IMG/VR virus record: IMGVR_UViG_3300049215_000771
Span: 124,001 to 188,000 of that record
Direction: 5' to 3' (one strand)
DNA length: 64,000 bases
Shown here: in pieces, positions 3,879 to 53,848 of the stretch
How positions within the stretch are numbered: the stretch's first letter is position 1
Layout of the letters: each line of letters opens with the position of its first letter
The notes under the pieces: generated by a model
Database searches by the model: none
Told to the model about the DNA's origin: nothing
What the model saw: only the letters and a program-made list of their open reading frames with translations
Program-made: the position numbers and the translations under genes

Positions 3879-4214
3879 ATGGAAGAAGAACAAGAACGGG
3901 CGTTGCTTTGCCTCCGTTGCGAGGATATGCCCGAACCGAATACGGACGGAACACTGAAGAATAAGTGTTCCGAATGCGGGGCTGCAATATGGGTCAGCGC
4001 CGCCGGCCAGAAGTTGATGGCCGATGGCGTCAAGCCCATCTGCAATCGCTGCGCTGAACCCGTTGTGAACGACGGCGAAACGAAGATGGAAGTGCCCGCC
4101 GAAGTCTTGAAGGAGATGTTCCAGCAAGTCGTTGTTGATGCTGGACGACACGGCGCAAAGCCCAAAGACATTTTCCGCATGGTCAAGGAAATTTACGAAC
4201 TTCCCAGGAAGTAG
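3879..4214 (+). CDS. putative zinc-binding protein
   Basis: Three CxxC pairs (CLRC, CSEC, CNRC). Confidence 0.65.
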   Translation: MEEEQERALLCLRCEDMPEPNTDGTLKNKCSECGAAIWVSAAGQKLMADGVKPICNRCAEPVVNDGETKMEVPAEVLKEMFQQVVVDAGRHGAKPKDIFRMVKEIYELPRK

Positions 4215-4222
4215 ACGGTCTT
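4197..4222 (+). promoter_or_regulatory. class-II promoter (GAACT-N16-GTCTT)
   Basis: Matches the ten-copy GAAC-N-GTCTT motif; 20 nt upstream of ORF 4242. Confidence 0.65.
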
Positions 4223-4241
4223 CCTTGCAGGAGGAAATACC

Positions 4242-4613
4242 ATGCAAGACTACCTGCAAGATCGTGTTGAAACGCTGCAATCCCTGTCCGGCCTTCGAGT
4301 TACGGTGAGGGAAGAGAAGGGACAAAACGTCTTCGAGTTTTTCCACGGCAAGGAATCCGTGAAAACTTGCTTCACCTACGACAAGGCCAAACTGTTCGCT
4401 GAGGGCATCGAATTCGTCCACCGGGTCAAATTCACGCAGGAAACCCTGTTCGTGAATATGCCGCTCCGGGAGCTTGGTTATGTCTTCGAGTTGCCGACCT
4501 TCATCTACATGAGCCGGGATTCGGCGGCGCAAGATTTACTCAAGGGCGAGGAAACGCTGACGTTGGCTGAAGCCGTTGCCCGTGTGATTTTATCTCACAG
4601 GCAAGATGCCTAG
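4242..4613 (+). CDS. hypothetical protein
   Basis: AGGAGG SD. Confidence 0.75.
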   Translation: MQDYLQDRVETLQSLSGLRVTVREEKGQNVFEFFHGKESVKTCFTYDKAKLFAEGIEFVHRVKFTQETLFVNMPLRELGYVFELPTFIYMSRDSAAQDLLKGEETLTLAEAVARVILSHRQDA

Positions 4614-4643
4614 TTTACAAAGCTGGGCGGCTCGTGGTATAAT
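4614..4643 (+). promoter_or_regulatory. sigma70-type promoter
   Basis: TTTACA-N18-TATAAT with extended TG. Confidence 0.75.
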
Positions 4644-4667
4644 CGGGCAGCCCGATAGGAGAATGGG

Positions 4668-5183
4668 ATGGCCCGGCACTACCTACCCTCGCTGAAGGAC
4701 ACCAAGGCTATCGCCCCTATGGGTGAGAAGCTGGCGGATATTTTCTTGAAGAGCGCCCTGATGGAACGACATCACGGCTTTCAGGAATGGACCACCAACG
4801 ACGCCAAAGAAATGGGGCCAGGCGCTCTGTTATTGTGGCGTCGAATGGCGATTTTTGGCGGGCATAACCCTGCCAAAGTCAGCATCGGTGCTGCCTTCGT
4901 TGTCGTAATGCAGATCGAGGTTCCTGGTGATGCTGTCCTGTGGGCTTTCACGCTCAACAGGTTGTGGAACCAGGGTGGGCCGGTTGATCTGGAAGCCTTG
5001 GCGACCGCTTTTCCTGATGGTTTCCCCACCGAGCGGGGTAAGGAAGAAATTTGGGACGCTCAGAAGTGTTCCGATTGGGGTGAAGAGCCAAGTAACGACA
5101 ATATGCTGGATCACCCCGAATTTTTGACCGATACGGAAAACTTCATCGAGAAGAAGGAATGGTGCAAATGGCTGGTAACTTGA
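4668..5183 (+). CDS. hypothetical protein
   Basis: AGGAG SD, follows promoter. Confidence 0.75.
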   Translation: MARHYLPSLKDTKAIAPMGEKLADIFLKSALMERHHGFQEWTTNDAKEMGPGALLLWRRMAIFGGHNPAKVSIGAAFVVVMQIEVPGDAVLWAFTLNRLWNQGGPVDLEALATAFPDGFPTERGKEEIWDAQKCSDWGEEPSNDNMLDHPEFLTDTENFIEKKEWCKWLVT

Positions 5184-5482
5184 CACACGCAACGGGAGAA
5201 ACTTTCAAGGCCGAGGTTTTGGACTCGGCTGAACCCGTCCTGGTTGATTTTTACGCCGACTGGTGTGGTCCTTGTCGGGCGCTCACTCCGACCCTGCAAG
5301 AACTTTCTGTCGAGGGCGTCAAGGTCGTGAAGGTGGACGCCGAGCAGGAGCGGGAATTGTGCAGCGAGTACGGTGTTAGCGCCCTGCCGACGCTGCTTGT
5401 GGTAAAGGGCGGCGAAGTAAAGGCGAAACTGGTCGGCCTCCAAAACAAGGCCCGGCTGGTGGAAGCCCTCAGTTTGGGATAA
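5168..5482 (+). CDS. trxA: thioredoxin
   Basis: VLVDFYADWCGPC active site, cis-Pro motif (ALPT), about 104 aa. Confidence 0.95.
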   Translation: MAGNLTHATGETFKAEVLDSAEPVLVDFYADWCGPCRALTPTLQELSVEGVKVVKVDAEQERELCSEYGVSALPTLLVVKGGEVKAKLVGLQNKARLVEALSLG

Positions 5483-5484
5483 CC

Positions 5485-5751
5485 ATGACCGATTTTTGGG
5501 ACGTACACGGCGTCTGGTTCATCATCTTCATGTGTTTCTTCCCCCGGCTGACCATGCTGTTTGCAACAGCCGGGGGCGGCGGCTTCTTCTACTGGTTGGG
5601 TTGGTTGTTCGCTCCGAGGCTTACCGTTGCTATTTTGGCAACGTACTTCTACGGACATACCAACACCGTCCTCGTTGTCTTCACCTGGCTTTGGGCTTTT
5701 GCCGGTGAAAGCACGGAAAAAACTGTTGTCAAGAAGGGGACCGTGGGATGA
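5485..5751 (+). CDS. small membrane protein
   Basis: Three hydrophobic segments. Confidence 0.7.
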   Translation: MTDFWDVHGVWFIIFMCFFPRLTMLFATAGGGGFFYWLGWLFAPRLTVAILATYFYGHTNTVLVVFTWLWAFAGESTEKTVVKKGTVG

Positions 5752-6005
5752 AACTCATCTACGTTTATACCGACGAACACGGGCGAGAGCGTGGCTTCGT
5801 CAACGAGAACGACGCCAGCCTCGCCAGGGGTTATGGCTCTGGTCTTGACCGACCTCCTGTTCGTGAGATCAAGGTGTTCGAGAACTACGGCGAATTTGCC
5901 GATGAACGCAACCAGGCCATTATCGACAATGCCCTCGCCAAACTGACGGCCCAGGAGAAGAAACTGCTGGGCTTGACGTTCCCGGAGAAGCCTGACGAAG
6001 AATAA
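5748..6005 (+). CDS. hypothetical protein
   Basis: ATGA-coupled ORF. Confidence 0.7.
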   Translation: MKLIYVYTDEHGRERGFVNENDASLARGYGSGLDRPPVREIKVFENYGEFADERNQAIIDNALAKLTAQEKKLLGLTFPEKPDEE

Positions 6006-6012
6006 CGTCTTG

Positions 6013-6310: not shown

Positions 6311-6311
6311 T
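6276..6311 (+). terminator. intrinsic terminator
   Basis: GGGGCCAGGGA-CGGCTA-TCCCTGGCCCC (11 bp) followed by TGTATTTTT. Confidence 0.75.
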
Positions 6312-6330
6312 TCACCTTCAGGAATTCAAC

Positions 6331-7078: not shown

Positions 7079-7096
7079 TGATTCTTGCCTAACTAC

Positions 7097-7125
7097 TTGA
7101 CAACCGCCAAAAACCGAAGTAGTAT
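7097..7125 (+). promoter_or_regulatory. sigma70-type promoter
   Basis: TTGACA-N17-TAGTAT. Confidence 0.8.
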
Positions 7126-7164
7126 AGGCGTGTGGAAACGAGAAACCTCAAACCGGAGAAAACC

Positions 7165-20017: not shown

Positions 20018-20046
20018 TTTACAACCTCAAACTATCGTGGTAAAAT
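20018..20046 (+). promoter_or_regulatory. sigma70-type promoter
   Basis: TTTACA-N17-TAAAAT with extended TG. Confidence 0.75.
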
Positions 20047-20107
20047 CCGACCAGGCTTTCAGTCGCCGTCTTCATGCGTGAGGTTTGGGAAAATCCGAGA
20101 AAGTTCC

Positions 20108-20133
20108 GAACCTCTTCCAGAATCGTGGGTCTT
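20108..20133 (+). promoter_or_regulatory. class-II promoter (GAACC-N16-GTCTT)
   Basis: Ten-copy motif, upstream of parB-like gene. Confidence 0.75.
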
Positions 20134-20176
20134 CCTGTTGTAGCGAAGAACCACAACCCCCTGTAAGGAGTCGGAG

Positions 20177-21322
20177 ATGGCACGAGTTGTCAACTACAGC
20201 CAGGGCGAGAAGCTGGAGCAGCAGATCGAACTCTCGCTCATCACGAAGTCCCACAACCCCCGGCACAGCCACCGGCACCTGCTGACCCTGTTTCACGAGA
20301 AGGGCAGCCACATTCACCCGCCCGAAGTCCGGGCCGAGTATATCCGAGAGATCGACGCCAACTTCCCGCATATCCGTCAGCGGGCCGAGAGTATCAAGAC
20401 GCTCGGTCAGCTTGAGGCCGTGACGCTTCGCTACTTCAACGCCAAGATCGCCGGCTCCGACGAATATACGCAGCGCTACGGCATCTGCCAGGGCGAATGC
20501 CGCACCCTCGCCTGGGCGCTTATCGAGGCCGAGACGGGCGAGCCGCAGACCGTTCGTGCCGTTATCGAGCGGCTGACGGTGGACCAGGCGTTCGAGCGGG
20601 CGCTGGCCGAGAATATCGAGCGTGAGGATATGTCGCCGAACGACCTGGCGGCATCCTTCAATGAGATGCTGACCGTCCGCATCAATCCCCGGACCACCGA
20701 CCCGACCCTGGAAGACGGCCAGCCCAACCCGTTGTACGATCCGGCCCACCCGAAGGGTCGTCCTTACACCCTGAAGGAAGTCGCCGAGAAGGTCAAGAAG
20801 GACTACCATTGGGTCCGCAGCCGGGCCAGCCTCGTCTACCTCCCGGAGAAGGACAAGGCGCAGATCGAGGCCGACCACCGGGCCGGCAAGCGTGACCTGA
20901 CCCGCTACTGCAAGAAGGCGGGCAAGCTGGCGACCCAACTCAAGGCCAAGGCCAAGGAAACCGGCCAGCCCGTCGAGGCTCTGCTTGAGCAGTGTGCCGC
21001 CCCGGAAAATTCCCCGGCTTCCGGGACGAATATCTCTGGACAAGCCGTTGCCGATCAGGTACAACCTGATATTCTGACTGTACAGCCAGAGCAGCGCCGG
21101 CGAGTCAAGAGCCTCAAGGAAGTCGTGGCGCTGTTCGACGCCACGTCCCTGGACAATTTGGCCCGACTCCAGGCGTTGGCCGAGGTCATGAACCTGGCTG
21201 ATGACCCTGCAACGTCGCTTCGACTTGCTTTGGATGAGCGAGAGAAGCGGGCAACGGAGGCCGAGCTTCGGTCTGGCCGGGAAGCCGACCGTGAAGCCCG
21301 CCGCAGTCAAAAGTCTGCCTGA
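20177..21322 (+). CDS. ParB-family protein (ParBc + HTH)
   Basis: NPR...SIKTLGQL...GECRTLA...ALAENIEREDMSP...TLKEVAEKVKKDYHWV. Confidence 0.8.
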   Translation: MARVVNYSQGEKLEQQIELSLITKSHNPRHSHRHLLTLFHEKGSHIHPPEVRAEYIREIDANFPHIRQRAESIKTLGQLEAVTLRYFNAKIAGSDEYTQRYGICQGECRTLAWALIEAETGEPQTVRAVIERLTVDQAFERALAENIEREDMSPNDLAASFNEMLTVRINPRTTDPTLEDGQPNPLYDPAHPKGRPYTLKEVAEKVKKDYHWVRSRASLVYLPEKDKAQIEADHRAGKRDLTRYCKKAGKLATQLKAKAKETGQPVEALLEQCAAPENSPASGTNISGQAVADQVQPDILTVQPEQRRRVKSLKEVVALFDATSLDNLARLQALAEVMNLADDPATSLRLALDEREKRATEAELRSGREADREARRSQKSA

Positions 21323-21327
21323 CATTC

Positions 21328-21372
21328 CGCCAACCACAGCGTATTCTTAGCGAACCTTCGCTGTGGTTGGCG
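21328..21372. repeat. 14-bp inverted repeat overlapping the sigma-gene promoter
   Basis: CGCCAACCACAGCG (21328-41) / CGCTGTGGTTGGCG (21359-72). Confidence 0.85.
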
Positions 21373-21378
21373 TGTCTT
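21352..21378 (+). promoter_or_regulatory. class-II promoter (GAACC-N17-GTCTT)
   Basis: Ten-copy motif, upstream of the sigma gene. Confidence 0.65.
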
Positions 21379-21440
21379 CTCAGCGAGGGCAGCAAACGTG
21401 CGTCGGAAAACCCTGTACGGGCCTGGTATGGAGTCTAGTT

Positions 21441-22442
21441 ATGACGGACACGGTTCCCTACATCAAGCTGACCAAGAAGGCTGAGGAGAAGTGCCTGGAC
21501 CTGTTGGTTCAGGCGAACGTGCTGCTCAAGAAGTGGGCGGAATGCTTCGGCGCTCGCAAAAGCCGAGAGTTTCGCAAGCTGTTGTTCAAGGGGCATCGAG
21601 ACAAGGCAGCGATGGCGGAAGTGGAGCAATCCATCCCGGTCACGCTACTCGACGAGTTCCGCCAGGAACGGCAGTTCATCATCGCCATTCACGTCACCAA
21701 GTACCCCGATCTCGACAACAGGACGGTCGAATTCGCCATGCTGTGTGGCTACAGCGGGCTGGGTCGCAAGCACGCCAAGCGCTGGTTCGCTCAGAACGGC
21801 GAAGGCAACGGCATGTCGCTGGATGACTACAAGAACGAGGCATACCTCGCCATCTTGGACAGCATCTACGGCTACACCGACCGTACCATCAGCTTCTCCA
21901 GCTTCGCCTGGGCCTCGCTGAAGAACCGGATGATCGCCTGCACCAACAAGTGCAACCTGTTGTGCCCGCTCACCAACCCCGACCTGGAGTTGCTGGCCCG
22001 GTACGAAGACACTCGGAAGACCTTCAACGATCACGTCACCTTCGATCAGGTGGTGGCGGCGATGGGTCTGGACGAGGAACAGTACAAGGCGCTCGGTGCC
22101 ATCATGACGAAGGTGTACGCCGAGTCGCAGATCGCCGTGGACCACACTGGCCACGACGACACGCCCAACGACTACACGTCGCTCCGCAGCGGCATCGACA
22201 ACGACGGCGAGGATCGCATCATTCGCCTCCAGGTCCGCCAGGCTATCGACGAGGCGGACCTGACCGACTTCGAGCGTATTGTGTTGGAAACTTCCATGAA
22301 TCCGTACTACGGATGGCAGTCGGACGTGGCCCGGAACAACATCAATCCGTCAACCAAGAAACCGTACACCCGCATGTGGGTCGGCCTGGCGCTCAAGAAC
22401 GCCCATGAGAAGGTTCGCCAGGCCATTCAGCGGGTCGCATGA
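21441..22442 (+). CDS. phage-encoded sigma70-family RNA polymerase sigma factor
   Basis: Region 2 (DDYKNEAYLAILDSIYGY...FSSFAWASLKNRM), region 3-like (TFDQVVAAMGL), region 4 (LTDFERIVLE...QSDVA...TRMWVGLALKNAHEKVR). Confidence 0.8.
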   Translation: MTDTVPYIKLTKKAEEKCLDLLVQANVLLKKWAECFGARKSREFRKLLFKGHRDKAAMAEVEQSIPVTLLDEFRQERQFIIAIHVTKYPDLDNRTVEFAMLCGYSGLGRKHAKRWFAQNGEGNGMSLDDYKNEAYLAILDSIYGYTDRTISFSSFAWASLKNRMIACTNKCNLLCPLTNPDLELLARYEDTRKTFNDHVTFDQVVAAMGLDEEQYKALGAIMTKVYAESQIAVDHTGHDDTPNDYTSLRSGIDNDGEDRIIRLQVRQAIDEADLTDFERIVLETSMNPYYGWQSDVARNNINPSTKKPYTRMWVGLALKNAHEKVRQAIQRVA

Positions 22443-23490: not shown

Positions 23491-23770
23491 AGAACTGAGT
23501 GTTCGCAAGGGACGCATCGACGTGCCGGCTGGCAACCACGCCAACGCTGCCAGTGTCGTTGAAACCCATCACGCCAGCGAGAACGCTGTTGTGGTTGTCG
23601 GCGGCAACTTCGGGAGTGTCCTGGGCAATGTGTACGCAGGCAACAGCATCGTTGTCGCCCGGCATCATGAGGAAGCCGGCCAGGTGGAAATCCTGAAGTC
23701 GCTGGCCGAGAAATTCGGCTACAGGTTGTCGAAAATTCCGAACAAGAAACCCGAACGGCGGTCTTCCTGA
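23396..23770 (+). CDS. hypothetical phage protein
   Basis: GGAGG SD before ATG 23396 (MGFNTTVVVLNDAL...). Confidence 0.75.
   Translation: MGFNTTVVVLNDALGEIENDPKFGQRLASAVKELSVRKGRIDVPAGNHANAASVVETHHASENAVVVVGGNFGSVLGNVYAGNSIVVARHHEEAGQVEILKSLAEKFGYRLSKIPNKKPERRSS
23740..23765 (+). promoter_or_regulatory. class-II promoter (TTCCGAACA-N16-GTCTT)
   Basis: Ten-copy motif at the gene end, before ORF 23770. Confidence 0.65.
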
Positions 23771-24030
23771 TGTCAGATGGTTTCGCTGAAAATGGTATTT
23801 TCTACTACGGGGCCAGGGAGCCGAAATCCTTCCCCGATGTCGAGGAAGTGAAGCCGGAAATTGGCAGTTACGATCCCGATGAGTCGGATAGCATCAACGC
23901 CCGGCGATATTTCGGGTTCACGGACTACGAGGAAATTGACATCTTCGTGCTTCGCTCCAGGCGACATGATCGCCGTGGACAGTGGCGCACGGAGTTTTAC
24001 TTCCGAGTTCTTGTGTTGGAGGCAAAGTGA
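23770..24030 (+). CDS. hypothetical protein
   Basis: TGATG-coupled ORF. Confidence 0.6.
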   Translation: MSDGFAENGIFYYGAREPKSFPDVEEVKPEIGSYDPDESDSINARRYFGFTDYEEIDIFVLRSRRHDRRGQWRTEFYFRVLVLEAK

Positions 24031-24650
24031 ACATTCATATCACCAACTTCGTTCGCCGGCAGACCAAGGAAAGTGGCTACTCCCATTGGGAGATTCCCGA
24101 CTCCTCGCTGCTGGAACGGGTGCATCGTAACTTCCATCGCCAGAAGCCTGGCTACAGGGAAGGCGTCATCCTCGTCCCGGTCGAGCCTGAAGGTTTCTTC
24201 AGCAGCATCGTGGAGTTGAAGGAAGGCGACGTGTTGGTGGGCGAATACAAGGCCCGCCGACCGGGTGAGACGCCAAGAAAGTCTACCGGCGCACTGGCGG
24301 GCCAGAAAATCCCTGCCAAAAGCGTGGACATCGTTCTGTACGCCCATCACGTCCTGGCCGAAAAGAACGAGCAGGAGTCCGATGCCGATTGGGAGATCGT
24401 CAGCGTCAACGCCTCCCCGACCAAGGAAGAAACGCCGATCCCGACCGGGGCGCTAATCGCCAACCACCTGGAGTTGTCGGGCGGCACGGCCACGAAGATG
24501 ACGGACGAGCAATTCGTACAATTGCTCAGGAAGTCGGTTCTCTTCTGGTCAAACAAGGCGAACATCGCCCCGGACCATCTTCGCAATTTGTACGTCCTGG
24601 ATGACCAGGGTGATGCCCACAAATTGTCCAACATCGCCCCGCTGGAGTGA
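24027..24650 (+). CDS. DUF3228-family protein
   Basis: FVRRQ...GYR...YKARRPGETP...AKSVDIVLY...DWEIVSVNA...NHL..SGG pattern; GGAGG SD with GTG. Confidence 0.65.
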   Translation: MNIHITNFVRRQTKESGYSHWEIPDSSLLERVHRNFHRQKPGYREGVILVPVEPEGFFSSIVELKEGDVLVGEYKARRPGETPRKSTGALAGQKIPAKSVDIVLYAHHVLAEKNEQESDADWEIVSVNASPTKEETPIPTGALIANHLELSGGTATKMTDEQFVQLLRKSVLFWSNKANIAPDHLRNLYVLDDQGDAHKLSNIAPLE

Positions 24651-25944: not shown

Positions 25945-26021
25945 GGTTGCCTCCGTTGTCGTATCGTCCAGGCGTCTGTTCTCACTTAACTGTGCTACGG
26001 CGGTTTTGTCCGGTTTTTTCC

Positions 26022-26047
26022 GAACCCAAGCAAAAAATCCCGGTCTT
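26022..26047 (+). promoter_or_regulatory. class-II promoter (GAACC-N16-GTCTT)
   Basis: Ten-copy motif. Confidence 0.75.
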
Positions 26048-26080
26048 CCTGACGTAACAAAGGCACACAGGAGATAAGAC

Positions 26081-26686
26081 ATGAGTTTTCGGACGCAACG
26101 TGGCCGGCGCAAGACCAGGAAGCCCGACCAGATCATCGTGGGCGCTGTCCAGTTGGATTACGACCACTTCCACGAGGAACCGGAGCGGGGCCGGCAGGAC
26201 CATTACTACAAGGGCCAGGTGTACGTCAACAACAAGCTGCTGCCCTTCGAGTTGCACCTGATGCACCACCCCGAATACGACAAGAAGGCGCTCCAGGACG
26301 GCAACAAGCTGTACACTGCCATCATCGAGATCAACGGCGGCGGCATCTACGACGGTCACAAGCTGGTGAAGCACGACTGCAATCGTTGCACCGGCAATAC
26401 GGGCGGCAATGGTGATGCTGACGGCCCCCTGGCCCTGGCTCTGTGGCAGCCCATCATCAACATGGTCTGCCTGGACGTGTGCAAGCGGGACGGCGTGAAG
26501 CTGTTCCCTGCCGTCTACAAGTCCAACAAGGAAAGCGGCTGGTATTCCTTCTACCACTACGTTCCCATCGTGGGCGAGGAAACCCGCAAGCCGGCTCGCC
26601 AGCACTTCTACCACAAAAGCCTGGTCCCTGTGGACTGCCCGATCCACGGCCAGGTCGTGAACGAGGATGTCGAAACGGATTTGTAA
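26081..26686 (+). CDS. hypothetical protein (Cys/His-containing)
   Basis: AGGAG SD. Confidence 0.75.
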   Translation: MSFRTQRGRRKTRKPDQIIVGAVQLDYDHFHEEPERGRQDHYYKGQVYVNNKLLPFELHLMHHPEYDKKALQDGNKLYTAIIEINGGGIYDGHKLVKHDCNRCTGNTGGNGDADGPLALALWQPIINMVCLDVCKRDGVKLFPAVYKSNKESGWYSFYHYVPIVGEETRKPARQHFYHKSLVPVDCPIHGQVVNEDVETDL

Positions 26687-26695
26687 AAAGTTTCC

Positions 26696-26721
26696 GAACC
26701 TCGCCCGCCCAGCGAGGTCTT
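26696..26721 (+). promoter_or_regulatory. class-II promoter (GAACC-N16-GTCTT)
   Basis: Ten-copy motif. Confidence 0.75.
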
Positions 26722-26759
26722 CTATGCGGAGATCGAACAACCCATAAGGGAGCAGAACA

Positions 26760-27590
26760 ATGGCTCATCTGACCAAGGAATTCGTGACCGCTGGCCGGGC
26801 TGTCTTCACCCTCGAAGTCCCGGACACCTTCAAGACCAAGTACGAGGCCGACCACCGTGGCGCTGTGGTCAAGCCGCACTACACCTTCCGTGTCAACTTC
26901 AAGAAGGGCGAGGGCAACTACAAGGACACCTACTTCCTCCAGTTGCTCACCGGCCCCGACAACACCCGTTCCTACAGCTACCTGGGCATTCTCAACAAGG
27001 ACGAGGGGACGATCCGCCTCACGGCCAAGTCGTGCCGGGGCGAGGGCGATGTCGCCGTCCTGCTGGTTCGCCGGGCACTGGCCCGTGTGTGGCGCAACGA
27101 AGTCGCCGAGATCGAGAAGGCCGGCTTCCAACTGCACCACGAGGGTCGCTGTGGGCGCTGTGGGCGGGCGCTGACCGTCCCGGAGTCCATCGAGTGTGGC
27201 ATCGGCCCGGAGTGCATCAAGCAGATGGGCGGGGGCAACTACCCCCACCTGGTCGCCCAGGACGAGATCGACAAGGCCGAGGCTCGTCGGGAGCAGGCCG
27301 GGGCTGTCATCAAGCCCAACAACCTGAAGGATGCCGCTGCCGAGGCGATGGAACTGGCACGCCTTCAGAAGAAGGGGCTTCTGAGTGACGACGACCTGGA
27401 ACTGGAGCGGGCCATCGCCGAGTCCGAGGCGGCTGATGCCCGTGATGATTTCGAGGACGAGGAGCCGGAACCCGACGAGCCGGACCCCGCCAACGAAGCA
27501 GAAGATCGTGCCCTCCTGGGCATCTACCGGGGCAATCACGACCTGTTCGGGCGTCGGCCTGGCTATGGTCCCTACAGCGAGGGGTACTAA
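26760..27590 (+). CDS. DUF6011-domain protein
   Basis: HEGRCGRCGRALTVPESIECGIGPEC; N-terminal LLTGPDN...YSYLG domain; acidic tail. Confidence 0.8.
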   Translation: MAHLTKEFVTAGRAVFTLEVPDTFKTKYEADHRGAVVKPHYTFRVNFKKGEGNYKDTYFLQLLTGPDNTRSYSYLGILNKDEGTIRLTAKSCRGEGDVAVLLVRRALARVWRNEVAEIEKAGFQLHHEGRCGRCGRALTVPESIECGIGPECIKQMGGGNYPHLVAQDEIDKAEARREQAGAVIKPNNLKDAAAEAMELARLQKKGLLSDDDLELERAIAESEAADARDDFEDEEPEPDEPDPANEAEDRALLGIYRGNHDLFGRRPGYGPYSEGY

Positions 27591-28590: not shown

Positions 28591-28596
28591 AATTCC

Positions 28597-28623
28597 GAAC
28601 CGGGGGACCGCCAACCCGGTCTT
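28597..28623 (+). promoter_or_regulatory. class-II promoter (GAACC-N17-GTCTT)
   Basis: Ten-copy motif. Confidence 0.7.
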
Positions 28624-28665
28624 TCTTGCGAAGCGTTTGAAACCTGACCATGAAGGGAGATTACC

Positions 28666-28899
28666 ATGAGGGATGAATCGTTCGTCCGCAAGCCGTATCA
28701 GGCCACTGACTTCGCCGCTGCTGTGGCCCAGGTGAATCGCCAGCGCTGCCAGCGTTGTGAGGGCAAGGTCCGGTTCAATAACCAGACCAGCAAGCCCGAC
28801 AACGAAGGTATCGTGACGCTGGCCGGCATCTGCACCGAATGCCATCAGACCCACAGCATCATCTTCAACATCAACAACTTCGTGGTCCGGGAAGTCTAA
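28666..28899 (+). CDS. zinc-ribbon protein
   Basis: CQRC...CTEC; GGGAG SD. Confidence 0.7.
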   Translation: MRDESFVRKPYQATDFAAAVAQVNRQRCQRCEGKVRFNNQTSKPDNEGIVTLAGICTECHQTHSIIFNINNFVVREV

Positions 28900-28901
28900 C
28901 T

Positions 28902-29120
28902 ATGAATGAAGAAGTCGTCATCAACCTGCCCGTCGATCAGGCCAAGCTGCTTGTTGTCAGCATCCGGGCGGCGGCGGCACTGAGCCGCAATCACCGGCAC
29001 AACAAGCAGGCTGATGAATTCAGCGAATTGGCTGACATCATCCAGCGCCAGGTGGATGACCACGAAGAAGCAGAAGCGTTCGATGATCCCGGCGAGAATC
29101 GAACCTTCCTGGACGATTAA
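28902..29120 (+). CDS. hypothetical protein
   Basis: Coupled ORF. Confidence 0.65.
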   Translation: MNEEVVINLPVDQAKLLVVSIRAAAALSRNHRHNKQADEFSELADIIQRQVDDHEEAEAFDDPGENRTFLDD

Positions 29121-29122: not shown

Positions 29123-29971
29123 ATGAGCAGGATCAAGCAAACGAGCGACGTAATCGGCAACGCCATGAGGGAGGGGACTCCCCCGTGGCGTATGCCGTTT
29201 GTTGCCCACAAAAACAGCGGATTCCCCACCAACGCCTATACAAACCGGCAATATGGTGGTATAAATCCATTACTGCTCAATATCGCCGCCCTCAAGAATG
29301 GACACACCAGCAAGTATTGGGCGACGTACAAGCAGTGGGCCGGCATGGGCTGCCAGGTCAAGCGCCGTCCCGACGACGTGCCAGAAGGCGAATGGGCTGC
29401 CAAGATTGTCCGCCGAACCTACAACGAGGAAGATGACAAGGTTTCGTGGTCGCCGATCTTGGTTTTCAACGCCTCCCAGGTGTTTGGAAATTTCCATGTC
29501 GTTCCGGCGACGGCGTACCAGGTGTTGAAGGCAGAGATTTCCGACACCCCACCTGACTATAGTAACACGGATCGTTTGCTGGCCCAGGCGGTTTTCAAGG
29601 AAGGTGGCTACAGCAGGCCACGCTACGAGCGCCCGCCCAAAGACTTCATCTGTATGCCTTGGCGGAAGCGGTTTGTTGATGATGCTCACTGGTATGGTTC
29701 GTGTCTGCATGAGCTAATCCATTGGGCTGAATGGCGCACGGGATGGAAAGGCAGTGAAGAACAAGGCGAATTGATCGCTGAGATCGGCCAGGCGTATCTG
29801 GAAACACTTCTCGGCGTGCCGCATTGCAACGACTTGACCAACTACAACAAATGGTTGGACGACTGGCTCCGGGCGATGGACGAAGACCCACGATACATCT
29901 ACGAAGCCACCGCACAGGCCGAAAAAGCAGTCGATTTTGTCATGGGTCGTCGCCCCAACCGTGACGAATAG
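29123..29971 (+). CDS. ardC: ArdC-family antirestriction / ssDNA-binding protein
   Basis: TPPWRMPF...PTN...YGGINPLLL...WATYKQW...G..V N-domain plus zincin LHELIHW...GELIAEIG. Confidence 0.85.
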   Translation: MSRIKQTSDVIGNAMREGTPPWRMPFVAHKNSGFPTNAYTNRQYGGINPLLLNIAALKNGHTSKYWATYKQWAGMGCQVKRRPDDVPEGEWAAKIVRRTYNEEDDKVSWSPILVFNASQVFGNFHVVPATAYQVLKAEISDTPPDYSNTDRLLAQAVFKEGGYSRPRYERPPKDFICMPWRKRFVDDAHWYGSCLHELIHWAEWRTGWKGSEEQGELIAEIGQAYLETLLGVPHCNDLTNYNKWLDDWLRAMDEDPRYIYEATAQAEKAVDFVMGRRPNRDE

Positions 29972-31164: not shown

Positions 31165-31169
31165 TTTCC

Positions 31170-31195
31170 GAACCTTACACCTTCATGGCGGTCTT
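31170..31195 (+). promoter_or_regulatory. class-II promoter (GAACC-N16-GTCTT)
   Basis: Ten-copy motif. Confidence 0.75.
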
Positions 31196-31216
31196 CCTGG
31201 TAGAAGGGAGATTACC

Positions 31217-31441
31217 ATGAAGGTTCGTGTTGGTTCCAAGTACGTTTACAACCCGGCAGGGTTCGACATTTTCGACCCCAAGTGCCACATCGAGCCGGGA
31301 ACCATCGTCAAAGTCGGCAATCTGCCGAGCGCCCCACCCGCAAACACAATGGGTCAGTGCTACGTTTTCGACGTGGCAAGTGGCAAGTTCATCGGCATGG
31401 TTTCGACGGCCAGCCTCACGCCAGCCCCGAAGGGAAAGTGA
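31217..31441 (+). CDS. hypothetical protein
   Basis: GGGAG SD. Confidence 0.7.
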   Translation: MKVRVGSKYVYNPAGFDIFDPKCHIEPGTIVKVGNLPSAPPANTMGQCYVFDVASGKFIGMVSTASLTPAPKGK

Positions 31442-50327: not shown

Positions 50328-50402
50328 GGAATGGCCGCAGGCGCTCTCGACGAGCTACCTGCGGCATTCTCGTTGATGGAGAAATTTTCTTGTAGCGATT
50401 CC

Positions 50403-50428
50403 GAACCTTGCCTGGCCTGGACGGTCTT
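50403..50428 (+). promoter_or_regulatory. class-II promoter (GAACC-N16-GTCTT)
   Basis: Ten-copy motif, upstream of the helicase. Confidence 0.75.
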
Positions 50429-50476
50429 CATGGTGGAGATACGGATCACATAGGCTACGAGAGAAGGAAGCGATTC

Positions 50477-52792
50477 ATGGCTACCTCGAACAAGTTTGCT
50501 GGTCGCTGCAACAATCCCGCCTGCCCCCTGGGTAAGAACCGCTACAACGGCGTTGCTGTGGGCGAGGGCTACATCACCAAGATCAACGACAAGTGGGTAA
50601 CGTGGTGCAAGGAGTGTGTCCCCGTCCAGAAGAGCGCCGGCGAAGCCGAGCGCCGTGTCCTGACGGCGGACGGCAAGATTTTCACGCCCTACGAGCCGCA
50701 GAACCTTCCGCTCATCAAGTCCCTGAAGGGGCCGGGCGGCGTTTTCGGCCCCCGCTGGAACAAGGAAGGCAAGTTTTGGGAGATTTCTCTCGAACAGGCC
50801 GACCGCCAGCGCCTCCTCGAAGTCGCCGAGCGCCTCCGCTTGGAAGTCGCCCCGCAGCTTCGTGAGGGCAATCTCGTCACCGAACAGGCGCAGAACGCCA
50901 CCCACGCCGGCTTGTATCCGTTCCAGGTCGTCGGCGTCAACTGGATGGCGAAGCGCAAGAAGGCGCTCCTGGCCGACGAGATGGGTCTTGGCAAGACGAT
51001 CCAAGCGCTCATCAGCATCCCAGCCCACGGCAAGGCGCTGGTGGTCTGCCCGGCCACGCTGAAGCTGAACTGGCGTAACGAGGCGTCCGTCTGGCGTCCC
51101 GACCTGAAGGTTGTCGTCCTGAAGGGCGGCGATTCCTTCCGGTTCCCCCAGGCCGGCGAAATCGTCATCACCAACTACGACATCCTCGCCGACTACCTCG
51201 ACCCCACACCGAAGGTGAAGGGCGCTCGCAAGGCTCCCAAGATCACCTGGGAAGCGCTGAAGGCGTGGCGTGTCAAGCTGAAGGAACAACACCCGGAAGC
51301 TGAAGGCACGACCGTCATCTTCGACGAGGCACACAAGGTCAAGAACTACAAGACCGAGCGTAGCCGCAAGGTCCGGGAACTGTCCCGCCTCAGCAGCAGC
51401 GTTTGGGGTCTGACCGGCACGCCGCTCGACAACGAGCCGAGCGACTTGTACGGCGTCCTGGACAGCCTGGACATGGCGTTCGACGTGTTCACGCCCCGCA
51501 AGGGCCAGTCGTCGTTCCGTCGCTTCCAGGAGTTGTTCGCCGTGTCGGAAGATCGCTGGGGCGCTTGTCGCTACGGCACGCCCGACCCGATGGTTCCCGA
51601 ACTGCTCCGTCGTGTCATGCTCCGTCGCACCCGTGGCGAAGTCATGCCCGACCTGCCGACGAAGACCTACACCAACCTCATTGTTGGTGACATGCCGGAA
51701 CGCATTCGTCAGCAGCTTGACGAGATGTGGGAAAGCGACGGCACGGCGCTGGAAGTCGATGGTTCGCTGCCCCCGTTCGAGCGGTTCAGCGAAATCCGGG
51801 CGGCGCTGGCGAAGTCCAACATCCCGGCGATGTTGGAATACATCGAGGAACAGGAAGAACAGGGCGTCCCGCTCGTCGTGTTCTCCAGCCACCTGGCCCC
51901 GCTGGACGAACTGCTCGGTCGTCCGGGTTGGGCGGTGATTTCTGGCGACACGAAGCTGGAGAAGCGCCAGGAGATCGTCGATGCTTTCCAGGCCGGACAC
52001 CTGAAGGGCATCGCCCTCACCATCCGTGCTGGTGGTGTTGGTTTGACCTTGACCCACGCCTGGAAGGTGCTGTTCGTGGACCTGGATTGGGTTCCGGGTT
52101 GGAACAGCCAGGCCGAGGATCGTGTTTGCCGTATCGGGCAGACTTCCAACAAGGTCGAGATCGTCCGCATGGTGAACGATCACCCGCTCACCCTGCATAT
52201 TCTCAACATCCTGGCCGAGAAGACCCGGCTGATTGAGAACGCCGTCATCAAGACGATGCCGGTCGCTGTCAGCGCTCCCGTCACCCCGTCGAAGGAAACC
52301 GAAACGGAGGAACAGTACCAGGCTCGCATGGCCCGCATCCAGCAGGCCCAGGAGGAACTGGAGAAGGCCAAGGCCGAATCCGATGCTTCCCAGGCCAAGG
52401 CCAAGGCCAAAAGCAAGGTGGACCTGATCCACAGCCGGGAGAAGGGTCGCAACCAGCGCCCGATCCTCCCGCTGACCGACAAGCGGGTTGCCGTGGTTCG
52501 GGAAGCCTTCAAGTTCATGCTGTCCGTTTGTGACGGAGCGCATCAGCGTGACGCCCAGGGTTTCAACAAGCCCGACGCCGTGATCGCCCACTACCTGCTC
52601 ACGGCGGGCCTGGAGACGCCGAAGGAAGTGGAAGCGGCCTACTACATGCTGGTCCGCTACCATCGCCAGTTGAGCAAGAGCTACCCGCTCCTGTTCAACG
52701 GTAGCCCGGAAGATCGGGCAGCCATCATCGCTGAGGCGCAGGCCGGCGAAGATTCGATCTACAGTATGGACCCGGATCGCCATACCATCTAA
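50477..52792 (+). CDS. SNF2/SWI2-family (HARP-like) helicase
   Basis: LLADEMGLGKT, IFDEAH, LTGTP, MLRRT, VVFS, GGVGLTL, QAEDRVCRIGQ. Confidence 0.95.
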   Translation: MATSNKFAGRCNNPACPLGKNRYNGVAVGEGYITKINDKWVTWCKECVPVQKSAGEAERRVLTADGKIFTPYEPQNLPLIKSLKGPGGVFGPRWNKEGKFWEISLEQADRQRLLEVAERLRLEVAPQLREGNLVTEQAQNATHAGLYPFQVVGVNWMAKRKKALLADEMGLGKTIQALISIPAHGKALVVCPATLKLNWRNEASVWRPDLKVVVLKGGDSFRFPQAGEIVITNYDILADYLDPTPKVKGARKAPKITWEALKAWRVKLKEQHPEAEGTTVIFDEAHKVKNYKTERSRKVRELSRLSSSVWGLTGTPLDNEPSDLYGVLDSLDMAFDVFTPRKGQSSFRRFQELFAVSEDRWGACRYGTPDPMVPELLRRVMLRRTRGEVMPDLPTKTYTNLIVGDMPERIRQQLDEMWESDGTALEVDGSLPPFERFSEIRAALAKSNIPAMLEYIEEQEEQGVPLVVFSSHLAPLDELLGRPGWAVISGDTKLEKRQEIVDAFQAGHLKGIALTIRAGGVGLTLTHAWKVLFVDLDWVPGWNSQAEDRVCRIGQTSNKVEIVRMVNDHPLTLHILNILAEKTRLIENAVIKTMPVAVSAPVTPSKETETEEQYQARMARIQQAQEELEKAKAESDASQAKAKAKSKVDLIHSREKGRNQRPILPLTDKRVAVVREAFKFMLSVCDGAHQRDAQGFNKPDAVIAHYLLTAGLETPKEVEAAYYMLVRYHRQLSKSYPLLFNGSPEDRAAIIAEAQAGEDSIYSMDPDRHTI

Positions 52793-52801
52793 TCAACAAC
52801 G

Positions 52802-52827
52802 CCCACCAGGTTCGCCTGGTGGGTTTT
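52802..52827 (+). terminator. intrinsic terminator with UUCG loop
   Basis: CCCACCAGG-TTCG-CCTGGTGGG-TTTT. Confidence 0.9.
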
Positions 52828-52834
52828 ATGCGTA

Positions 52835-52905
52835 CAGGTCGTCCCACCGGGGGATGATGGCGGGAGCCATCCAATTAGCAGAAGGTTCGACTCCTTCCGG
52901 CCTGG
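52835..52905 (+). ncRNA. tRNA-like element lacking a canonical anticodon arm
   Basis: Acceptor CAGGTCG/CGGCCTG (7 bp), T-arm GAAGG-TTCGACT-CCTTC; no 7-nt anticodon loop on a 5-bp stem, no CCA. Confidence 0.55.
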
Positions 52906-52932
52906 CTGGACAACATTCAACAGGAGAACAAC

Positions 52933-53361
52933 ATGGCTGGGAAAGTTACCATCAATGGCCACACCTACAAAATCGGCCCGAACGATGTCGTGTTCGTCAT
53001 CGGCAAGAAGGTGCATTTCAACTACCAGGTTGTCGATGAAGGTCAACAGAACATTCCCGAAGTGAAGGTTGAAGGCGATGTTCTCGACCTTCACAGTGTC
53101 GGTGCTGTCAGCGTCACCGGCAACGTCCAAGGCAGCGTGGACACCACTGGCGCTGTCAAGTGTGGCAACGTCGGCAAGGATGTCAACACCAACGGCAAGG
53201 TCGAGTGTGGCACGGTCGGCGGCAACGTCGATACCAACGGCAGTGTCGAGGTTAGCGGTGACTGTGGCAAGATCAACACGATGGGCAGCGTCACCGTCAA
53301 GGGTAACTGCAAGGGCAGCATCGACACGATGGGCAGCGTCAAGGTGGGGAGCAGGGGATGA
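52933..53361 (+). CDS. beta-solenoid repeat protein (bactofilin/polymer-forming-like)
   Basis: Repeated G-x-V-x-T-x-G-x-V-x-x units over the C-terminal 100 aa; AGGAG SD. Confidence 0.7.
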   Translation: MAGKVTINGHTYKIGPNDVVFVIGKKVHFNYQVVDEGQQNIPEVKVEGDVLDLHSVGAVSVTGNVQGSVDTTGAVKCGNVGKDVNTNGKVECGTVGGNVDTNGSVEVSGDCGKINTMGSVTVKGNCKGSIDTMGSVKVGSRG

Positions 53362-53813
53362 TCGAACAATTTGGTCGCAAAGTCTACCTGGATGTCTGAA
53401 GGGACGGCACACTCAGCATCCGGTCGGATGACAACACGAAGGAAAGAGAAGCCGCTCTCCCTGTGTTCACGACGGATACCAGGGAGGAAGCGGAACACCT
53501 GCAAACACTGTTCACTTGCCTGGTGCATTCCGGCGCATTGAAGGGCAAGCATGTTGTTCGGGCCATCAACCAGGCCAAGAATGACCACGAAGCGTACAAC
53601 GAAATGACCCGCCTGGGCCGGCTGATGGCACTGGCCTACGAAACCTACAAAGAACGCAAAGGCGGCGTGCAGTCCCATCGCTGTGAGGAAATGACTTCGG
53701 AGTGGTATTATTCGTTCAAGGACGGCCAGCGCCGCCTATTCAAAGGCGATTACGAAGTGCAGGGCGTCCACAACTTCTGCATGTTCTGTGGGTCGGACCT
53801 ACGAGAGATTTGA
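53358..53813 (+). CDS. hypothetical protein with in-frame TGA at codon 14 (candidate selenoprotein or pseudogene)
   Basis: ATGA-coupled start 53358; MIEQFGRKVYLDV*RDGTLSIRS... is continuous with ORF 53463-53813. Confidence 0.55.
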
Positions 53814-53821
53814 GAAGTTCC

Positions 53822-53848
53822 GAACCTGACAGTTAGTTCACGGGTCTT
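53822..53848 (+). promoter_or_regulatory. class-II promoter (GAACC-N17-GTCTT)
   Basis: Ten-copy motif, 6 nt before ATG 53855. Confidence 0.7.

What the first reader, a model, noticed from the sequence alone, without database searches (positions are those of the whole stretch)
4197..53848. A ten-copy second promoter class, TTCCGAAC(C)-N16/17-GTCTT, and a phage sigma factor in its own regulon
The motif occurs at 4197, 20108, 21352, 23740, 26022, 26696, 28597, 31170, 50403 and 53822, always on the plus strand and just upstream of an ORF start, with 16-17 nt between GAACY/GAACA and GTCTT. It is distinct from the eleven TT(T/G)AC(A/G)-N17/18-TAnnAT sigma70 promoters. The GAAC...GTC(T) layout resembles ECF/RpoE-type promoters (established). 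Its targets include ParB-like, sigma, DUF6011, the ArdC block and the SNF2 helicase. Inference: either the phage sigma (21441-22442) reads this motif in a positive feedback loop, or the phage uses a host stress ECF sigma to time a DNA-handling programme.
Basis: partly seen in the sequence, partly recalled or inferred. Interest (0 to 1): 0.68.

Follow-up and report, generated by a model that had tools for sequence, protein, structure and literature searches.

The report
Phage sigma factor and its promoters
A 533-kb T4-type phage carries about 33 copies of a two-box promoter, ten of them in this window, that looks like a bacterial stress (ECF) promoter. It is most likely read by a very divergent sigma factor that the phage encodes and that also sits behind this promoter; the sigma assignment is inferred, not shown.

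Summary
All ten sites exist at the stated coordinates, on the + strand, 3-61 nt upstream of start codons. Eight match TTCCGAAC-N17/18-GTCTT exactly, against 0 expected. The window is part of a 532,729-bp T4-type phage, where the class has 29 perfect and about 33 good copies, 17 of them in an ORFan-rich block at 213-230 kb.

The same GAAC(C)-N15-17-GTCT layout lies upstream of the orthologous sigma gene or operon in nine related metagenomic phage contigs. In most of these it also precedes the ParB-like and DUF6011 genes. Boxes are conserved and spacers are not, which is promoter-like behaviour.

The ORF at 21441-22442 is a genuine but very divergent sigma70-family protein. It has no Pfam hit above cut-off, but its fold matches full-length SigA. 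It is not an ECF sigma by architecture.

The phage's other sigmas are an RpoD-like one that keeps the -35-reading residues for TTGACA-type boxes, and a region-2-only gp55-like late sigma. By elimination and by conserved linkage, the window sigma is the best candidate reader. A conserved sigma70-type promoter upstream could prime the loop.

About a third of the spacers hold hairpins, as in the PeSL cassettes of T4-type phages.

The parts
4193..4223 (+). Class-2 promoter, degenerate -35 (TTACGAAC-N17-GTCTTC). It lies 18 nt upstream of the ATG of ORF 4242-4613 (123 aa, no family hit).
   Evidence: Pfam/PHROG blank
20018..20046 (+). Sigma70-type promoter with extended -10 (TTTACA-N17-TGgTAAAAT) upstream of the ParB-like/sigma block. 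This is the proposed priming promoter.
   Evidence: same arrangement in L076 (3743), L077 (8203) and L080 (6438)
20104..20134 (+). Class-2 promoter (perfect), 42 nt upstream of the ParB-like gene.
   Evidence: orthologous sites at L076 3833 and L077 8651, and upstream of the ParB-like genes at L080 6999, L086 4118 and L244 2047
20177..21322 (+). ParB-like protein (381 aa), a class-2 target and the gene immediately upstream of the sigma gene.
   Evidence: phrog_4715 and phrog_3264, E 5e-9; ParB_N (weak) on orthologues
21348..21379 (+). Class-2 promoter of the sigma gene itself (TAGCGAAC-N18-GTCTTC), 61 nt upstream of the ATG. A weak sigma70-like match (CTGACA-N17-TATTCT) abuts it at 21319-21347.
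   Evidence: GAAC(C)...GTCT-type site upstream of the orthologous sigma gene or operon in L076, L077, L080, L086, L244, L078, L079, L082, L072
21441..22442 (+). Divergent sigma70-family protein (333 aa, 'sigma-W' in this report). Helices 127-171 form region 2, 179-231 are region 3-like, 233-261 is a disordered linker, and 265-332 form region 4.
   Evidence: Pfam Sigma70_r2 only 14 bits; phrog_351 E 2.5e-4; profile of 17 homologues hits SigH 3mzy region 2, E 3e-4; AF2 pLDDT 80; Foldseek top 32 hits at E<=1e-3 are almost all full-length primary SigA chains, best E 2e-6
23736..23766 (+). Class-2 promoter (perfect). The ATG of ORF 23770-24030 lies 3 nt after GTCTTC, so the mRNA may be leaderless. 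A DUF3228 gene (23982-24650) follows.
   Evidence: orthologous site L076 6652
26018..26048 (+). Class-2 promoter (perfect), 32 nt upstream of ORF 26081-26686 (201 aa, unknown).
26692..26722 (+). Class-2 promoter (perfect) with a spacer hairpin (CCTCGC/GCGAGG, -11 kcal/mol), 37 nt upstream of the DUF6011 gene 26760-27590.
   Evidence: orthologous sites at L076 9440 and L077 13079 and upstream of the DUF6011 gene at L080 9726
28593..28624 (+). Class-2 promoter (N18, GTCTTT) heading the block 28666-28899 (zinc-ribbon-like), 28902-29120 and ArdC 29123-29971.
   Evidence: ArdcN E 2e-20 plus MPTase-PolyVal E 9e-15; orthologous site L076 11210
31166..31196 (+). Class-2 promoter (perfect), 20 nt upstream of a 74-aa ORF (31217-31441) that shares its leader and ribosome-binding site with the 28593 site.
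   Evidence: orthologous site L076 14200
50399..50429 (+). Class-2 promoter (perfect), 47 nt upstream of the SNF2-family helicase (ATG 50477 to 52792).
   Evidence: SNF2-rel_dom E 2e-32 and Helicase_C; phrog_62 E 2e-81
53818..53849 (+). Class-2 promoter (N18). The ATG of ORF 53855-54136 lies 5 nt after GTCTTC, so the mRNA may be leaderless.

Best explanation
The motif is a class of phage promoters, with a -35 box TTTCCGAACC, a -10 box GTCTTC 16-17 nt downstream, and a start site probably at the conserved TTGCG(A/G) 6-9 nt further on. The phage encodes no RNA polymerase, so these promoters must be used by host core RNA polymerase. The most likely reader is the phage's own divergent sigma factor (window 21441-22442). 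Proposed cascade: a sigma70-type promoter at 20018-20046 lets the host (or RpoD-like phage) holoenzyme transcribe the ParB-like and sigma genes soon after infection. The new sigma then fires about 33 class-2 promoters, including its own at 21348-21379, which gives positive feedback. These promoters drive an early-to-middle programme: ParB-like, ArdC anti-restriction, SNF2 helicase, RuvB/clamp-loader-like ATPase, PNK/HAD-like enzyme, DUF6011, and many small ORFans. The sigma would thus take the place that MotA/AsiA holds in T4. Late genes would be left to the gp55-like sigma. In about a third of the copies the spacer forms a GC-rich hairpin that probably attenuates read-through from upstream, making terminator-promoter cassettes like the PeSLs of T4-type phages. 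Shown: the motif, its statistics, its position and orientation, its conservation in relatives, the sigma fold, and the sigma inventory. Inferred: promoter activity, start site, which sigma reads it, timing, and hairpin function.
For: Motif statistics: 8 exact copies in the window against 0 expected; 29 perfect copies genome-wide. Position: co-oriented with genes and intergenic. 20 of 33 sites have an independently called same-strand start within 110 nt downstream, against a random mean of 3.4 and a maximum of 9 in 2000 trials. All 33 have a start codon close downstream, 32 with a ribosome-binding site. Phylogenetic footprint: syntenic contigs whose sigma orthologues are 87, 64, 65, 63, 53, 47, 46, 39 and 31% identical all carry GAAC(C)-N15-17-GTCT-type sites upstream of the sigma gene or operon. 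Most also carry them upstream of the ParB-like and DUF6011 genes. Spacers are unconserved, and the box flavours are lineage-specific: CCGAACC, TTGAACC, TTGCACC or CTGAACT at -35, and GTCTTC, CGTCCT, CCGTCTGGT, GTCTA or TCTCTT at -10. Sigma identity. No RNA polymerase beta or beta-prime genes. Elimination: the only other phage sigma with a region 4 (genome 90260-91228) matches primary SigA/RpoD at E 1e-15. It keeps FSTY.TW in region 2.4 and T(K)ERVRQ in region 4.2, the residues that read TATAAT and TTGACA-type boxes, and it has its own TTGAGT-N17-TATAAT promoter. The gp55-like sigma (phrog_234) has region 2 only, so it cannot read a -35 box. A sigma70-type promoter upstream of the ParB/sigma block is conserved in L076, L077 and L080. 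No AsiA or MotA was found. Hairpins: 9 of 26 distinct spacers fold better than shuffles at p<=0.05. PeSL stem-loops sit between -35 and -10 or over the -10 box in T4-type phages and act as terminators (PMC2839356). The phage is T4-type (gp23 capsid protein, E 1e-86).
Against: The motif matches the generic ECF layout (GGAACTT / GTC for E. coli sigmaE, PMC6648896), while the candidate sigma is not ECF-like in architecture. In the most distant relative held whole (LR756511.1, 31% identical sigma) the motif is not enriched: 15 matches against 20 for the control, and only the site upstream of the sigma gene stands out. If that sigma autoregulates there, its regulon is tiny or its motif has changed. 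Alternatively another factor reads the site. Covariation between region-4.2 residues and the base 5' of GAACC is suggestive (Met with C in five lineages, Ala with T in two), but P0009 breaks it (Met with TTGCACC), and the number of lineages is small. Host unknown.
Confidence: 0.57

Rival explanations
1. The motif is a promoter class read by a host ECF (group 4) sigma. The phage taps a host stress response to time these genes, and the phage sigma is merely one of the targets.
For: The GAAC-N16/17-GTC layout is the canonical ECF one (PMC6648896). The candidate phage sigma is not ECF-like. In LR756511.1 the only clear copy sits upstream of the sigma gene, as expected if something else switches that gene on.
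Against: The box flavours change between closely related phages (CCGAACC, TTGAACC, TTGCACC; GTCTTC, CGTCCT, CCGTCTGGT) although their sigmas are 53-65% identical to the window's. That fits a co-evolving phage-encoded reader better. Depending on a stress-gated, anti-sigma-controlled host factor for about 33 promoters, including anti-restriction genes needed at once, is unusual.
Confidence: 0.15
2. The motif is read by another phage sigma, the RpoD-like protein at genome 90260-91228. The window sigma would then be a middle gene that reads a further class, giving a serial cascade as in SPO1.
For: The RpoD-like sigma has regions 2 and 4 and its own sigma70-type promoter, so it is made early. The genome has further unexplained upstream motifs that the window sigma could read: TTTAGAnnnTTGTACCCTA, 15 copies on the + strand.
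Against: Its region 2.4 and 4.2 residues are those of primary sigmas that read TATAAT/TTGACA. That fits the abundant TTTACA...TGGTAnnAT class, not GAACC/GTCTTC. The tight and conserved linkage is between the motif and the window sigma's own locus.
Confidence: 0.12
3. The motif is not a promoter. It is a terminator or attenuator, an RNA-processing site, an operator, a parS-like site for the adjacent ParB-like protein, or simply the conserved end of a mobile cassette.
For: A third of the spacers form hairpins with G-U pairs and apparent compensatory changes (CTTGC/GCAAG, CTTGC/GCGAG, CTCGC/GCGAG). In L086 the hairpins have T-rich tails. Promoter, leader and ribosome-binding site are repeated as about 75-nt cassettes at 215-226 kb.
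Against: 17 of 26 distinct spacers have no significant hairpin, and hairpins are not conserved at orthologous sites, whereas the two boxes and their spacing are. The strict co-orientation with genes and the fixed short distance to start codons do not fit parS or operator sites. The + strand hairpins at these sites, apart from the weak one at 21359-21372, do not meet the terminator-scan criteria. No Rfam family matches. In PeSLs the hairpin and the promoter coexist, so hairpins do not argue against promoter function.
Confidence: 0.08

Closest known systems
Phage-encoded alternative sigma factors with their own middle or late promoter classes (Bacillus phage SPO1 gp28, coliphage phiEco32 gp36; from my own knowledge), and the sigma factors of 'group 2' T4-like jumbo phages (PMC7824862)
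   Same: The phage has no RNA polymerase of its own. It encodes several sigmas, has a T4 gp23-type capsid protein, and carries a dedicated bipartite promoter class in front of non-structural genes.
   Different: The jumbo-phage survey describes two sigma types: a minimal one and an RpoD-like one. The window sigma is a third, much more divergent type. It has no Pfam hit above cut-off and only 17 homologues among 5.8 billion proteins. Neither its promoter class nor its specificity has been described, and none is tested here.
ECF (group 4) sigma promoters, for example E. coli sigmaE: GGAACTT at -35 and GTC at -10 (PMC6648896)
   Same: A GAAC-containing -35 box, a GTC(T) -10 box, a 16-17 nt spacer, and a copy upstream of the sigma gene itself (autoregulation is typical of ECF sigmas; my knowledge).
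   Different: The candidate reader is 333 aa, with an N-terminal helical domain and a region-3-like domain. Its model aligns with full-length primary SigA, not with two-domain ECF sigmas. No anti-sigma gene was identified next to it.
PeSL (promoter-early stem-loop) cassettes of T4-type phages RB49 and phi1 (PMC2839356)
   Same: The host is a T4-type phage. Repeated promoter + stem-loop + Shine-Dalgarno cassettes of about 75-100 nt sit in front of small ORFans, clustered in one plastic region (213-230 kb). The stem-loops lie between -35 and -10 (this genome) or over the -10 box (L080, L086), and they contain G-T pairs.
   Different: PeSL promoters are sigma70-type early promoters. Here the cassette is built on the GAACC/GTCTTC class. 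Terminator function and cassette mobility are untested here.
T4 middle-mode transcription (MotA/AsiA sigma appropriation; my knowledge, and AsiA in PMC7824862)
   Same: It fills the same functional slot: a second temporal class in front of DNA-metabolism and host-takeover genes in a T4-type phage.
   Different: No AsiA or MotA homologue was detected. The -10 box is not sigma70-like, so a replacement sigma is implied rather than appropriation of the host sigma.

Membership tests
Sigma70 protein family (window ORF 21441-22442) | Region 2 (core binding and -10 recognition) | tested here: met
   The profile of 17 homologues aligns residues about 124-175 with region 2 of SigH 3mzy, E 3e-4. Pfam Sigma70_r2 scores only 14 bits, below cut-off. 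phrog_351 sigma, E 2.5e-4.
Sigma70 protein family (window ORF 21441-22442) | Overall multi-domain sigma fold including a C-terminal region-4 helix-turn-helix | tested here: met
   AF2 model pLDDT 80. The Foldseek PDB hits at E<=1e-3 are almost all full-length SigA chains of Thermus and Mycobacterium holoenzymes, aligned over about 350 columns, probability 1.0, best E 2e-6. The low TM score (0.36) reflects domain orientation.
Sigma70 protein family (window ORF 21441-22442) | Binds core RNA polymerase and directs promoter-specific initiation | not testable with these tools
ECF / group 4 sigma factors | Two-domain architecture (sigma2 + sigma4 only, about 170-220 aa, no region 3 or 1.2) | tested here: not met
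   The protein is 333 aa with six N-terminal helices and region-3-like helices 179-231. The best structural matches are full-length primary sigmas. No Sigma70_r4_2 or ECF model hit.
ECF-type promoter | -35 box containing GGAAC/GAAC, -10 box containing (C)GTC, spacer 16-17 nt | tested here: met
   The consensus is TTTCCGAACCT-N14-gGTCTTC. For comparison, sigmaE reads GGAACTT / GTC.
Functional promoter (any class) | Transcription start a few nt downstream of the -10 box | not testable with these tools
   No reads were available. Indirect support comes from position and orientation, conservation of the boxes but not the spacers in relatives, and two ATGs lying 3-5 nt after GTCTTC.
Autoregulated sigma (gene inside its own regulon) | Cognate motif directly upstream of the sigma gene or its operon | tested here: met
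Window 21348-21379. The same holds upstream of the orthologue in L076, L077, L080, L086, L244, L079, L082 and L072, and upstream of the operon in L078.
PeSL regulatory cassettes of T4-type phages | Stem-loop between or overlapping the -35 and -10 boxes of a repeated promoter, upstream of ORFans in a plastic region | tested here: met
   9 of 26 distinct spacers have significant hairpins. 17 copies lie in the 213-230 kb block, mostly before small unknown genes. Hairpins over the -10 box occur in L080 and L086. Definition.
PeSL regulatory cassettes of T4-type phages | The promoter is a strong sigma70-type early promoter | tested here: not met
   The boxes are GAACC/GTCTTC, not TTGACA/TATAAT. The genome's sigma70-type class is separate.
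T4 MotA-dependent middle promoters | MotA box at -30 with a sigma70 -10 box; MotA and AsiA encoded by the phage | tested here: not met
   No PF09114 or PF09010 match in the genome. The -10 box is GTCTTC.

The most novel reading that the evidence does not exclude
The window sigma founds an unrecognised, Pfam-invisible lineage of four-domain sigma70-family proteins confined to a clade of huge T4-type phages. It has converged on an ECF-style GAAC/GTC promoter and replaces the MotA/AsiA middle mode. Its promoters are embedded in PeSL-like terminator-promoter cassettes that spread ORFans. Together these would form a naturally orthogonal sigma/promoter pair whose -35 and -10 flavours co-diversify between sister phages.
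Probability: 0.35. Interest if true: 0.65.

Novelty: new variant of a known kind. Interest (0 to 1): 0.5.

Why it matters
Huge phages are known only from metagenomes, and their regulation is almost unstudied. This finding yields a three-tier transcription map for a 533-kb T4-type phage, derived from sequence alone. The tiers are sigma70-type promoters, a GAACC/GTCTTC class tied to a novel sigma, and a candidate gp55-type late class. The map makes one simple experiment decisive: the sigma plus a reporter in a heterologous host. If the pairing holds, it would add a new sigma lineage with a defined, compact promoter. It would show that an ECF-style promoter can be read by a non-ECF sigma. It would also extend the PeSL cassette idea beyond sigma70 promoters. 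Lineage-specific box variants would give a natural series for studying sigma-promoter co-evolution and for building orthogonal expression parts.

Tried and rejected
- Exact motif in other viruses: a scan of IMG/VR gave only 66 single chance hits.
There was no second carrier and no host clue.
- More sigma relatives: the search for related loci with the sigma alignment found nothing in IMG/VR and one partial contig in JGI metagenomes. Megablast of the window region against GenBank phages gave no match.
- DNA for relatives: for three sigma homologues (P0004, P0007, P0011) no DNA could be fetched. The prediction that P0004 (Ala in the recognition helix) goes with TTGAACC is therefore untested.
- Pure terminator or RNA-element reading: rejected, because most copies lack hairpins, orthologous sites do not conserve them, the + strand hairpins at these sites, apart from the weak one at 21359-21372, fail the terminator scan, and no Rfam family matches.
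- Phage RNA polymerase promoter: rejected, because no beta or beta-prime genes were found. The T7-like model's control rang nowhere, so that one is inconclusive.
- Class-2 regulon in LR756511.1: fetching the whole record showed the motif is not enriched there.
- De novo dyad counting on raw loci was swamped by coding signal.
- MAFFT alignment of the sigma upstream regions (A2) was poor, because two of my ranges cut off the motif. I rely on direct inspection instead.
- Not used: the large representative-protein search, complex prediction and the protein atlas. The fold result had already settled what the protein is.

Full report
**Context.** The window is bases 124001-188000 of a single 532,729-bp IMG/VR virus record with 52.7% G+C. 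The record is a T4-type phage. It has a gp23-type major capsid protein (E 1e-86) at 339 kb and a large terminase at 317 kb. It has no RNA polymerase beta or beta-prime genes. It therefore depends on host core RNA polymerase, like the 'group 2' jumbo phages, which carry sigma factors instead of polymerases (PMC7824862).

**Observation.**
- All ten sites exist at the stated coordinates on the + strand.
- Eight match TTCCGAAC-N-GTCTT exactly, against 0.00 expected from shuffles.
- The sites at 4193 and 21348 are degenerate in the -35 half.
- Each lies 3-61 nt upstream of a start codon, mostly with a GGAG-type ribosome-binding site.
- Genome-wide there are 29 perfect TTCCGAAC-N17/18-GTCTTC copies and about 33 good ones. 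Chance expectation is about 0.008 by my arithmetic.
- 27 of the 29 perfect copies are on the + strand. The two on the - strand lie in a - strand gene block.
- Seventeen copies are packed into 213-230 kb.
It has an A-rich tract, then TTTCCGAACCT, 14 variable bases, gGTCTTCc, and a conserved TTGCG(A/G) 3 nt further on.
- With a rough independent gene call, 20 of 33 sites have a same-strand start within 110 nt downstream. Random placement gives a mean of 3.4 and a maximum of 9 in 2000 trials.

**The sigma70-type class.** It is also real. It occurs twelve times on the + strand of the window against 0-4 in shuffles, as TTTACAACC...TGGTAnnAT with an extended -10 box.

**Comparative evidence that the motif is a promoter.** The sigma-like protein has only 17 homologues in the 5.8-billion-protein collection. 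All come from metagenomes, on contigs up to 673 kb. I fetched DNA for nine lineages.

| Locus | Sigma identity | Motif seen | Where |
|---|---|---|---|
| L076 | 87% | TTCCGAACC...GTCT | upstream of ParB-like, sigma, DUF6011 and three other genes |
| L077 | 64% | TTCCGAACC...GTCT | upstream of ParB-like, sigma, DUF6011 and one other gene |
| L244 | 53% | TTTCCGAACC-N16-CGTCCT | upstream of ParB-like and sigma |
| L080 | 65% | TTGAACC-N-CCGTCTgGTA | four sites |
| L086 | 63% | TTGCACC-N-CCGTCTGGT | five sites |
| L078 | 46% | TTGAACC-N16-GTCTA | upstream of the operon |
| L079 | 39%, 602-kb contig | aCGAACC-N16-TCTCTT | five sites in 21 kb |
| L082 | 47% | CTGAACT-N16-GTCTAT | upstream of sigma |
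| LR756511.1 (L072) | 31% | TTCGAACC-N15-GTCTCT | upstream of its sigma |

Across these lineages the boxes and the spacing are kept, while the spacers and the flanks differ. That is how promoters evolve. It is not how RNA structures or palindromic operators evolve.

**The sigma.**
- Pfam gives no hit above cut-off.
- A profile of the 17 homologues hits region 2 of SigH.
- The AlphaFold model (pLDDT 80) matches full-length primary SigA chains in holoenzyme structures, with Foldseek E down to 2e-6 and about 350 aligned columns.
- The alignment shows region 2 (DYxNEAY...FSSFAW..LKNRM). It also shows a region-3-like segment, a disordered linker, and region 4 (LTxFE..VLE...GWQ...PYTRMWV..ALKNA).
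- The protein is therefore a real sigma70-family member, but a four-domain one, not an ECF sigma.

**Who reads the motif?** The genome has other sigma-like genes.
- The 322-aa protein at 90260-91228 matches primary SigA/RpoD at E 1e-15. It keeps the FSTY.TW and T(K)ERVRQ motifs that read TATAAT and TTGACA-type boxes, and it has its own TTGAGT-N17-TATAAT promoter. It fits the sigma70-type class.
- The 179-aa protein at 413426-413965 is a gp55-like late sigma with region 2 only. It cannot read a -35 box. A TAAATA motif upstream of 23 genes, mostly in the structural half of the genome, is a candidate late promoter.
- By elimination, the window sigma is the only phage factor with a region 4 of unknown specificity, and it is the one linked to the motif in every lineage.
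- A sigma70-type promoter 60-85 nt upstream of the first class-2 promoter of the ParB/sigma block is conserved in the window, L076, L077 and L080. This gives a plausible priming step for a positive-feedback loop.
- No AsiA or MotA was found, so this sigma may fill the T4 middle-mode slot.

- There are no transcripts.
- The host is unknown.
- The motif has the generic ECF layout.
- In LR756511.1 the motif is not enriched, with 15 matches against 20 for the control. Only the sigma gene's own site stands out there. That phage's dominant upstream motif is TAAAGCTGTAC.
- Residue-base covariation is suggestive only. Met after YTR goes with CGAACC in five lineages and Ala goes with TGAACC in two, but P0009 breaks the rule.

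**Hairpins.**
- Nine of 26 distinct spacers fold significantly better than shuffles. The stems run from the ACC of the -35 box to the GGT of the -10 box.
- The variants CTTGC/GCAAG, CTTGC/GCGAG and CTCGC/GCGAG look compensatory, passing through a G-U intermediate.
- In L080 and L086 the stem is CCAGACGG/CCGTCTGG. It covers the -10 box and is followed by T-rich tails.
- Most copies lack hairpins, and orthologous sites do not share them. The hairpin is therefore an add-on, not the core of the element.
- This matches the PeSL cassettes of T4-type phages RB49 and phi1. There, stem-loops between -35 and -10 or over the -10 box terminate upstream transcription, and the cassettes flank ORFans in plastic regions (PMC2839356).
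- In this genome the promoter, leader and ribosome-binding site are repeated as about 75-nt cassettes at 215-226 kb.
- The difference from PeSLs is the promoter type.

**Regulon.**
- In the window: an unknown 123-aa protein, ParB-like, the sigma, an 86-aa ORF plus DUF3228, a 201-aa unknown, DUF6011, a zinc-ribbon-like protein plus ArdC, a 74-aa ORF, the SNF2 helicase and a 93-aa ORF.
- Elsewhere: a RuvB/clamp-loader-like ATPase, another AAA protein, a HAD/PNK-like enzyme and many small unknowns.
- No structural gene was seen among the targets examined. An early-to-middle timing is plausible but inferred.

**Verdict.** The promoter reading is strongly supported by position and comparative data (about 0.85-0.9). 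The assignment to the phage sigma with positive feedback is the best-supported reading but remains inferred (about 0.55-0.6). A host ECF sigma (0.15), the RpoD-like phage sigma (0.12) and non-promoter readings (0.08) remain open. It is a new variant of known kinds: a phage sigma with a cognate promoter class, and PeSL-like cassettes.

Noticed in passing
window 4614, 7097, 11028, 20018, 25152, 33773, 33969, 38129, 41262, 48907, 55814, 58995 (+ strand): There are twelve sigma70-type promoters with the extended consensus TTTACAACC-N11-(G)TGGTAnnAT, against 0-4 in shuffles. The same consensus is conserved in relatives L076, L077, L079 and L080. The region 33-49 kb has only this class, and 20-32 kb is dominated by class 2.
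   Followed up: partly
genome 214753-233229 (outside the window; loci L088, L089): A third repeated element occurs 15 times on the + strand: GGTACAAA, about 22 nt, TTTAGAnnnTTGTACCCTA. It often has GGTACAAA/TTTGTACC as an inverted repeat. It is interleaved with the class-2 cassettes and sits upstream of small genes. Its function is unknown; it could be another promoter class or an attenuator.
   Followed up: partly
genome, mostly 240-500 kb: (C)TAAATA(C/T) is the most enriched 7-mer in upstream regions, found before 23 genes. It resembles the T4 late promoter core and would suit the gp55-like sigma at 413426-413965.
   Followed up: partly
LR756511.1 (fetched whole as L094-L123): This 595-kb relative (42% G+C) has a different dominant upstream motif, TAAAGCTGTAC(T/A)AA, with 50 occurrences in upstream regions and no -35 box. 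One copy lies just downstream of the GAACC/GTCTCT site in front of its sigma orthologue.
   Followed up: partly
window 23766-23772 and 53849-53857: The ATG start codons lie only 3 and 5 nt after GTCTTC. These two genes may be translated from leaderless mRNAs, which would place the start site 6-8 nt after GTCT.
   Followed up: no
genome 286328-286717 and 514569-515135: Two further small proteins have weak similarity to sigma region 2. The first resembles the gp55-like sigma in its region-2 segment, by my reading of the two sequences. Neither has a family hit above cut-off.
   Followed up: partly
genome 58177, 351378, 453543, 517826: Four short open frames (88-149 aa) match separate segments of the Gp23 capsid model, in addition to the full gene at 339008-340213. 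They may be capsid-gene fragments or decoys.
   Followed up: no
L076 11737-13372; L244 689-1943: In the 87%-identical relative, the ArdC orthologue is split into ArdcN and MPTase ORFs, followed by a LAGLIDADG homing endonuclease gene. In L244, an IS605 OrfB/TnpB-like gene sits just upstream of the ParB-like/sigma block.
   Followed up: no
window 54324-54833: A 169-aa protein has two 'integrase repeat unit' (PF14882) matches, E 2e-13, downstream of the class-2 site at 53818.
   Followed up: no
whole record: IMG/VR classes the 533-kb record as a 'provirus', and the identical sigma protein is recorded on a contig of 673,178 bp. The true phage genome may therefore be larger than the record, or the flanks may have been trimmed as 'host'.
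   Followed up: no
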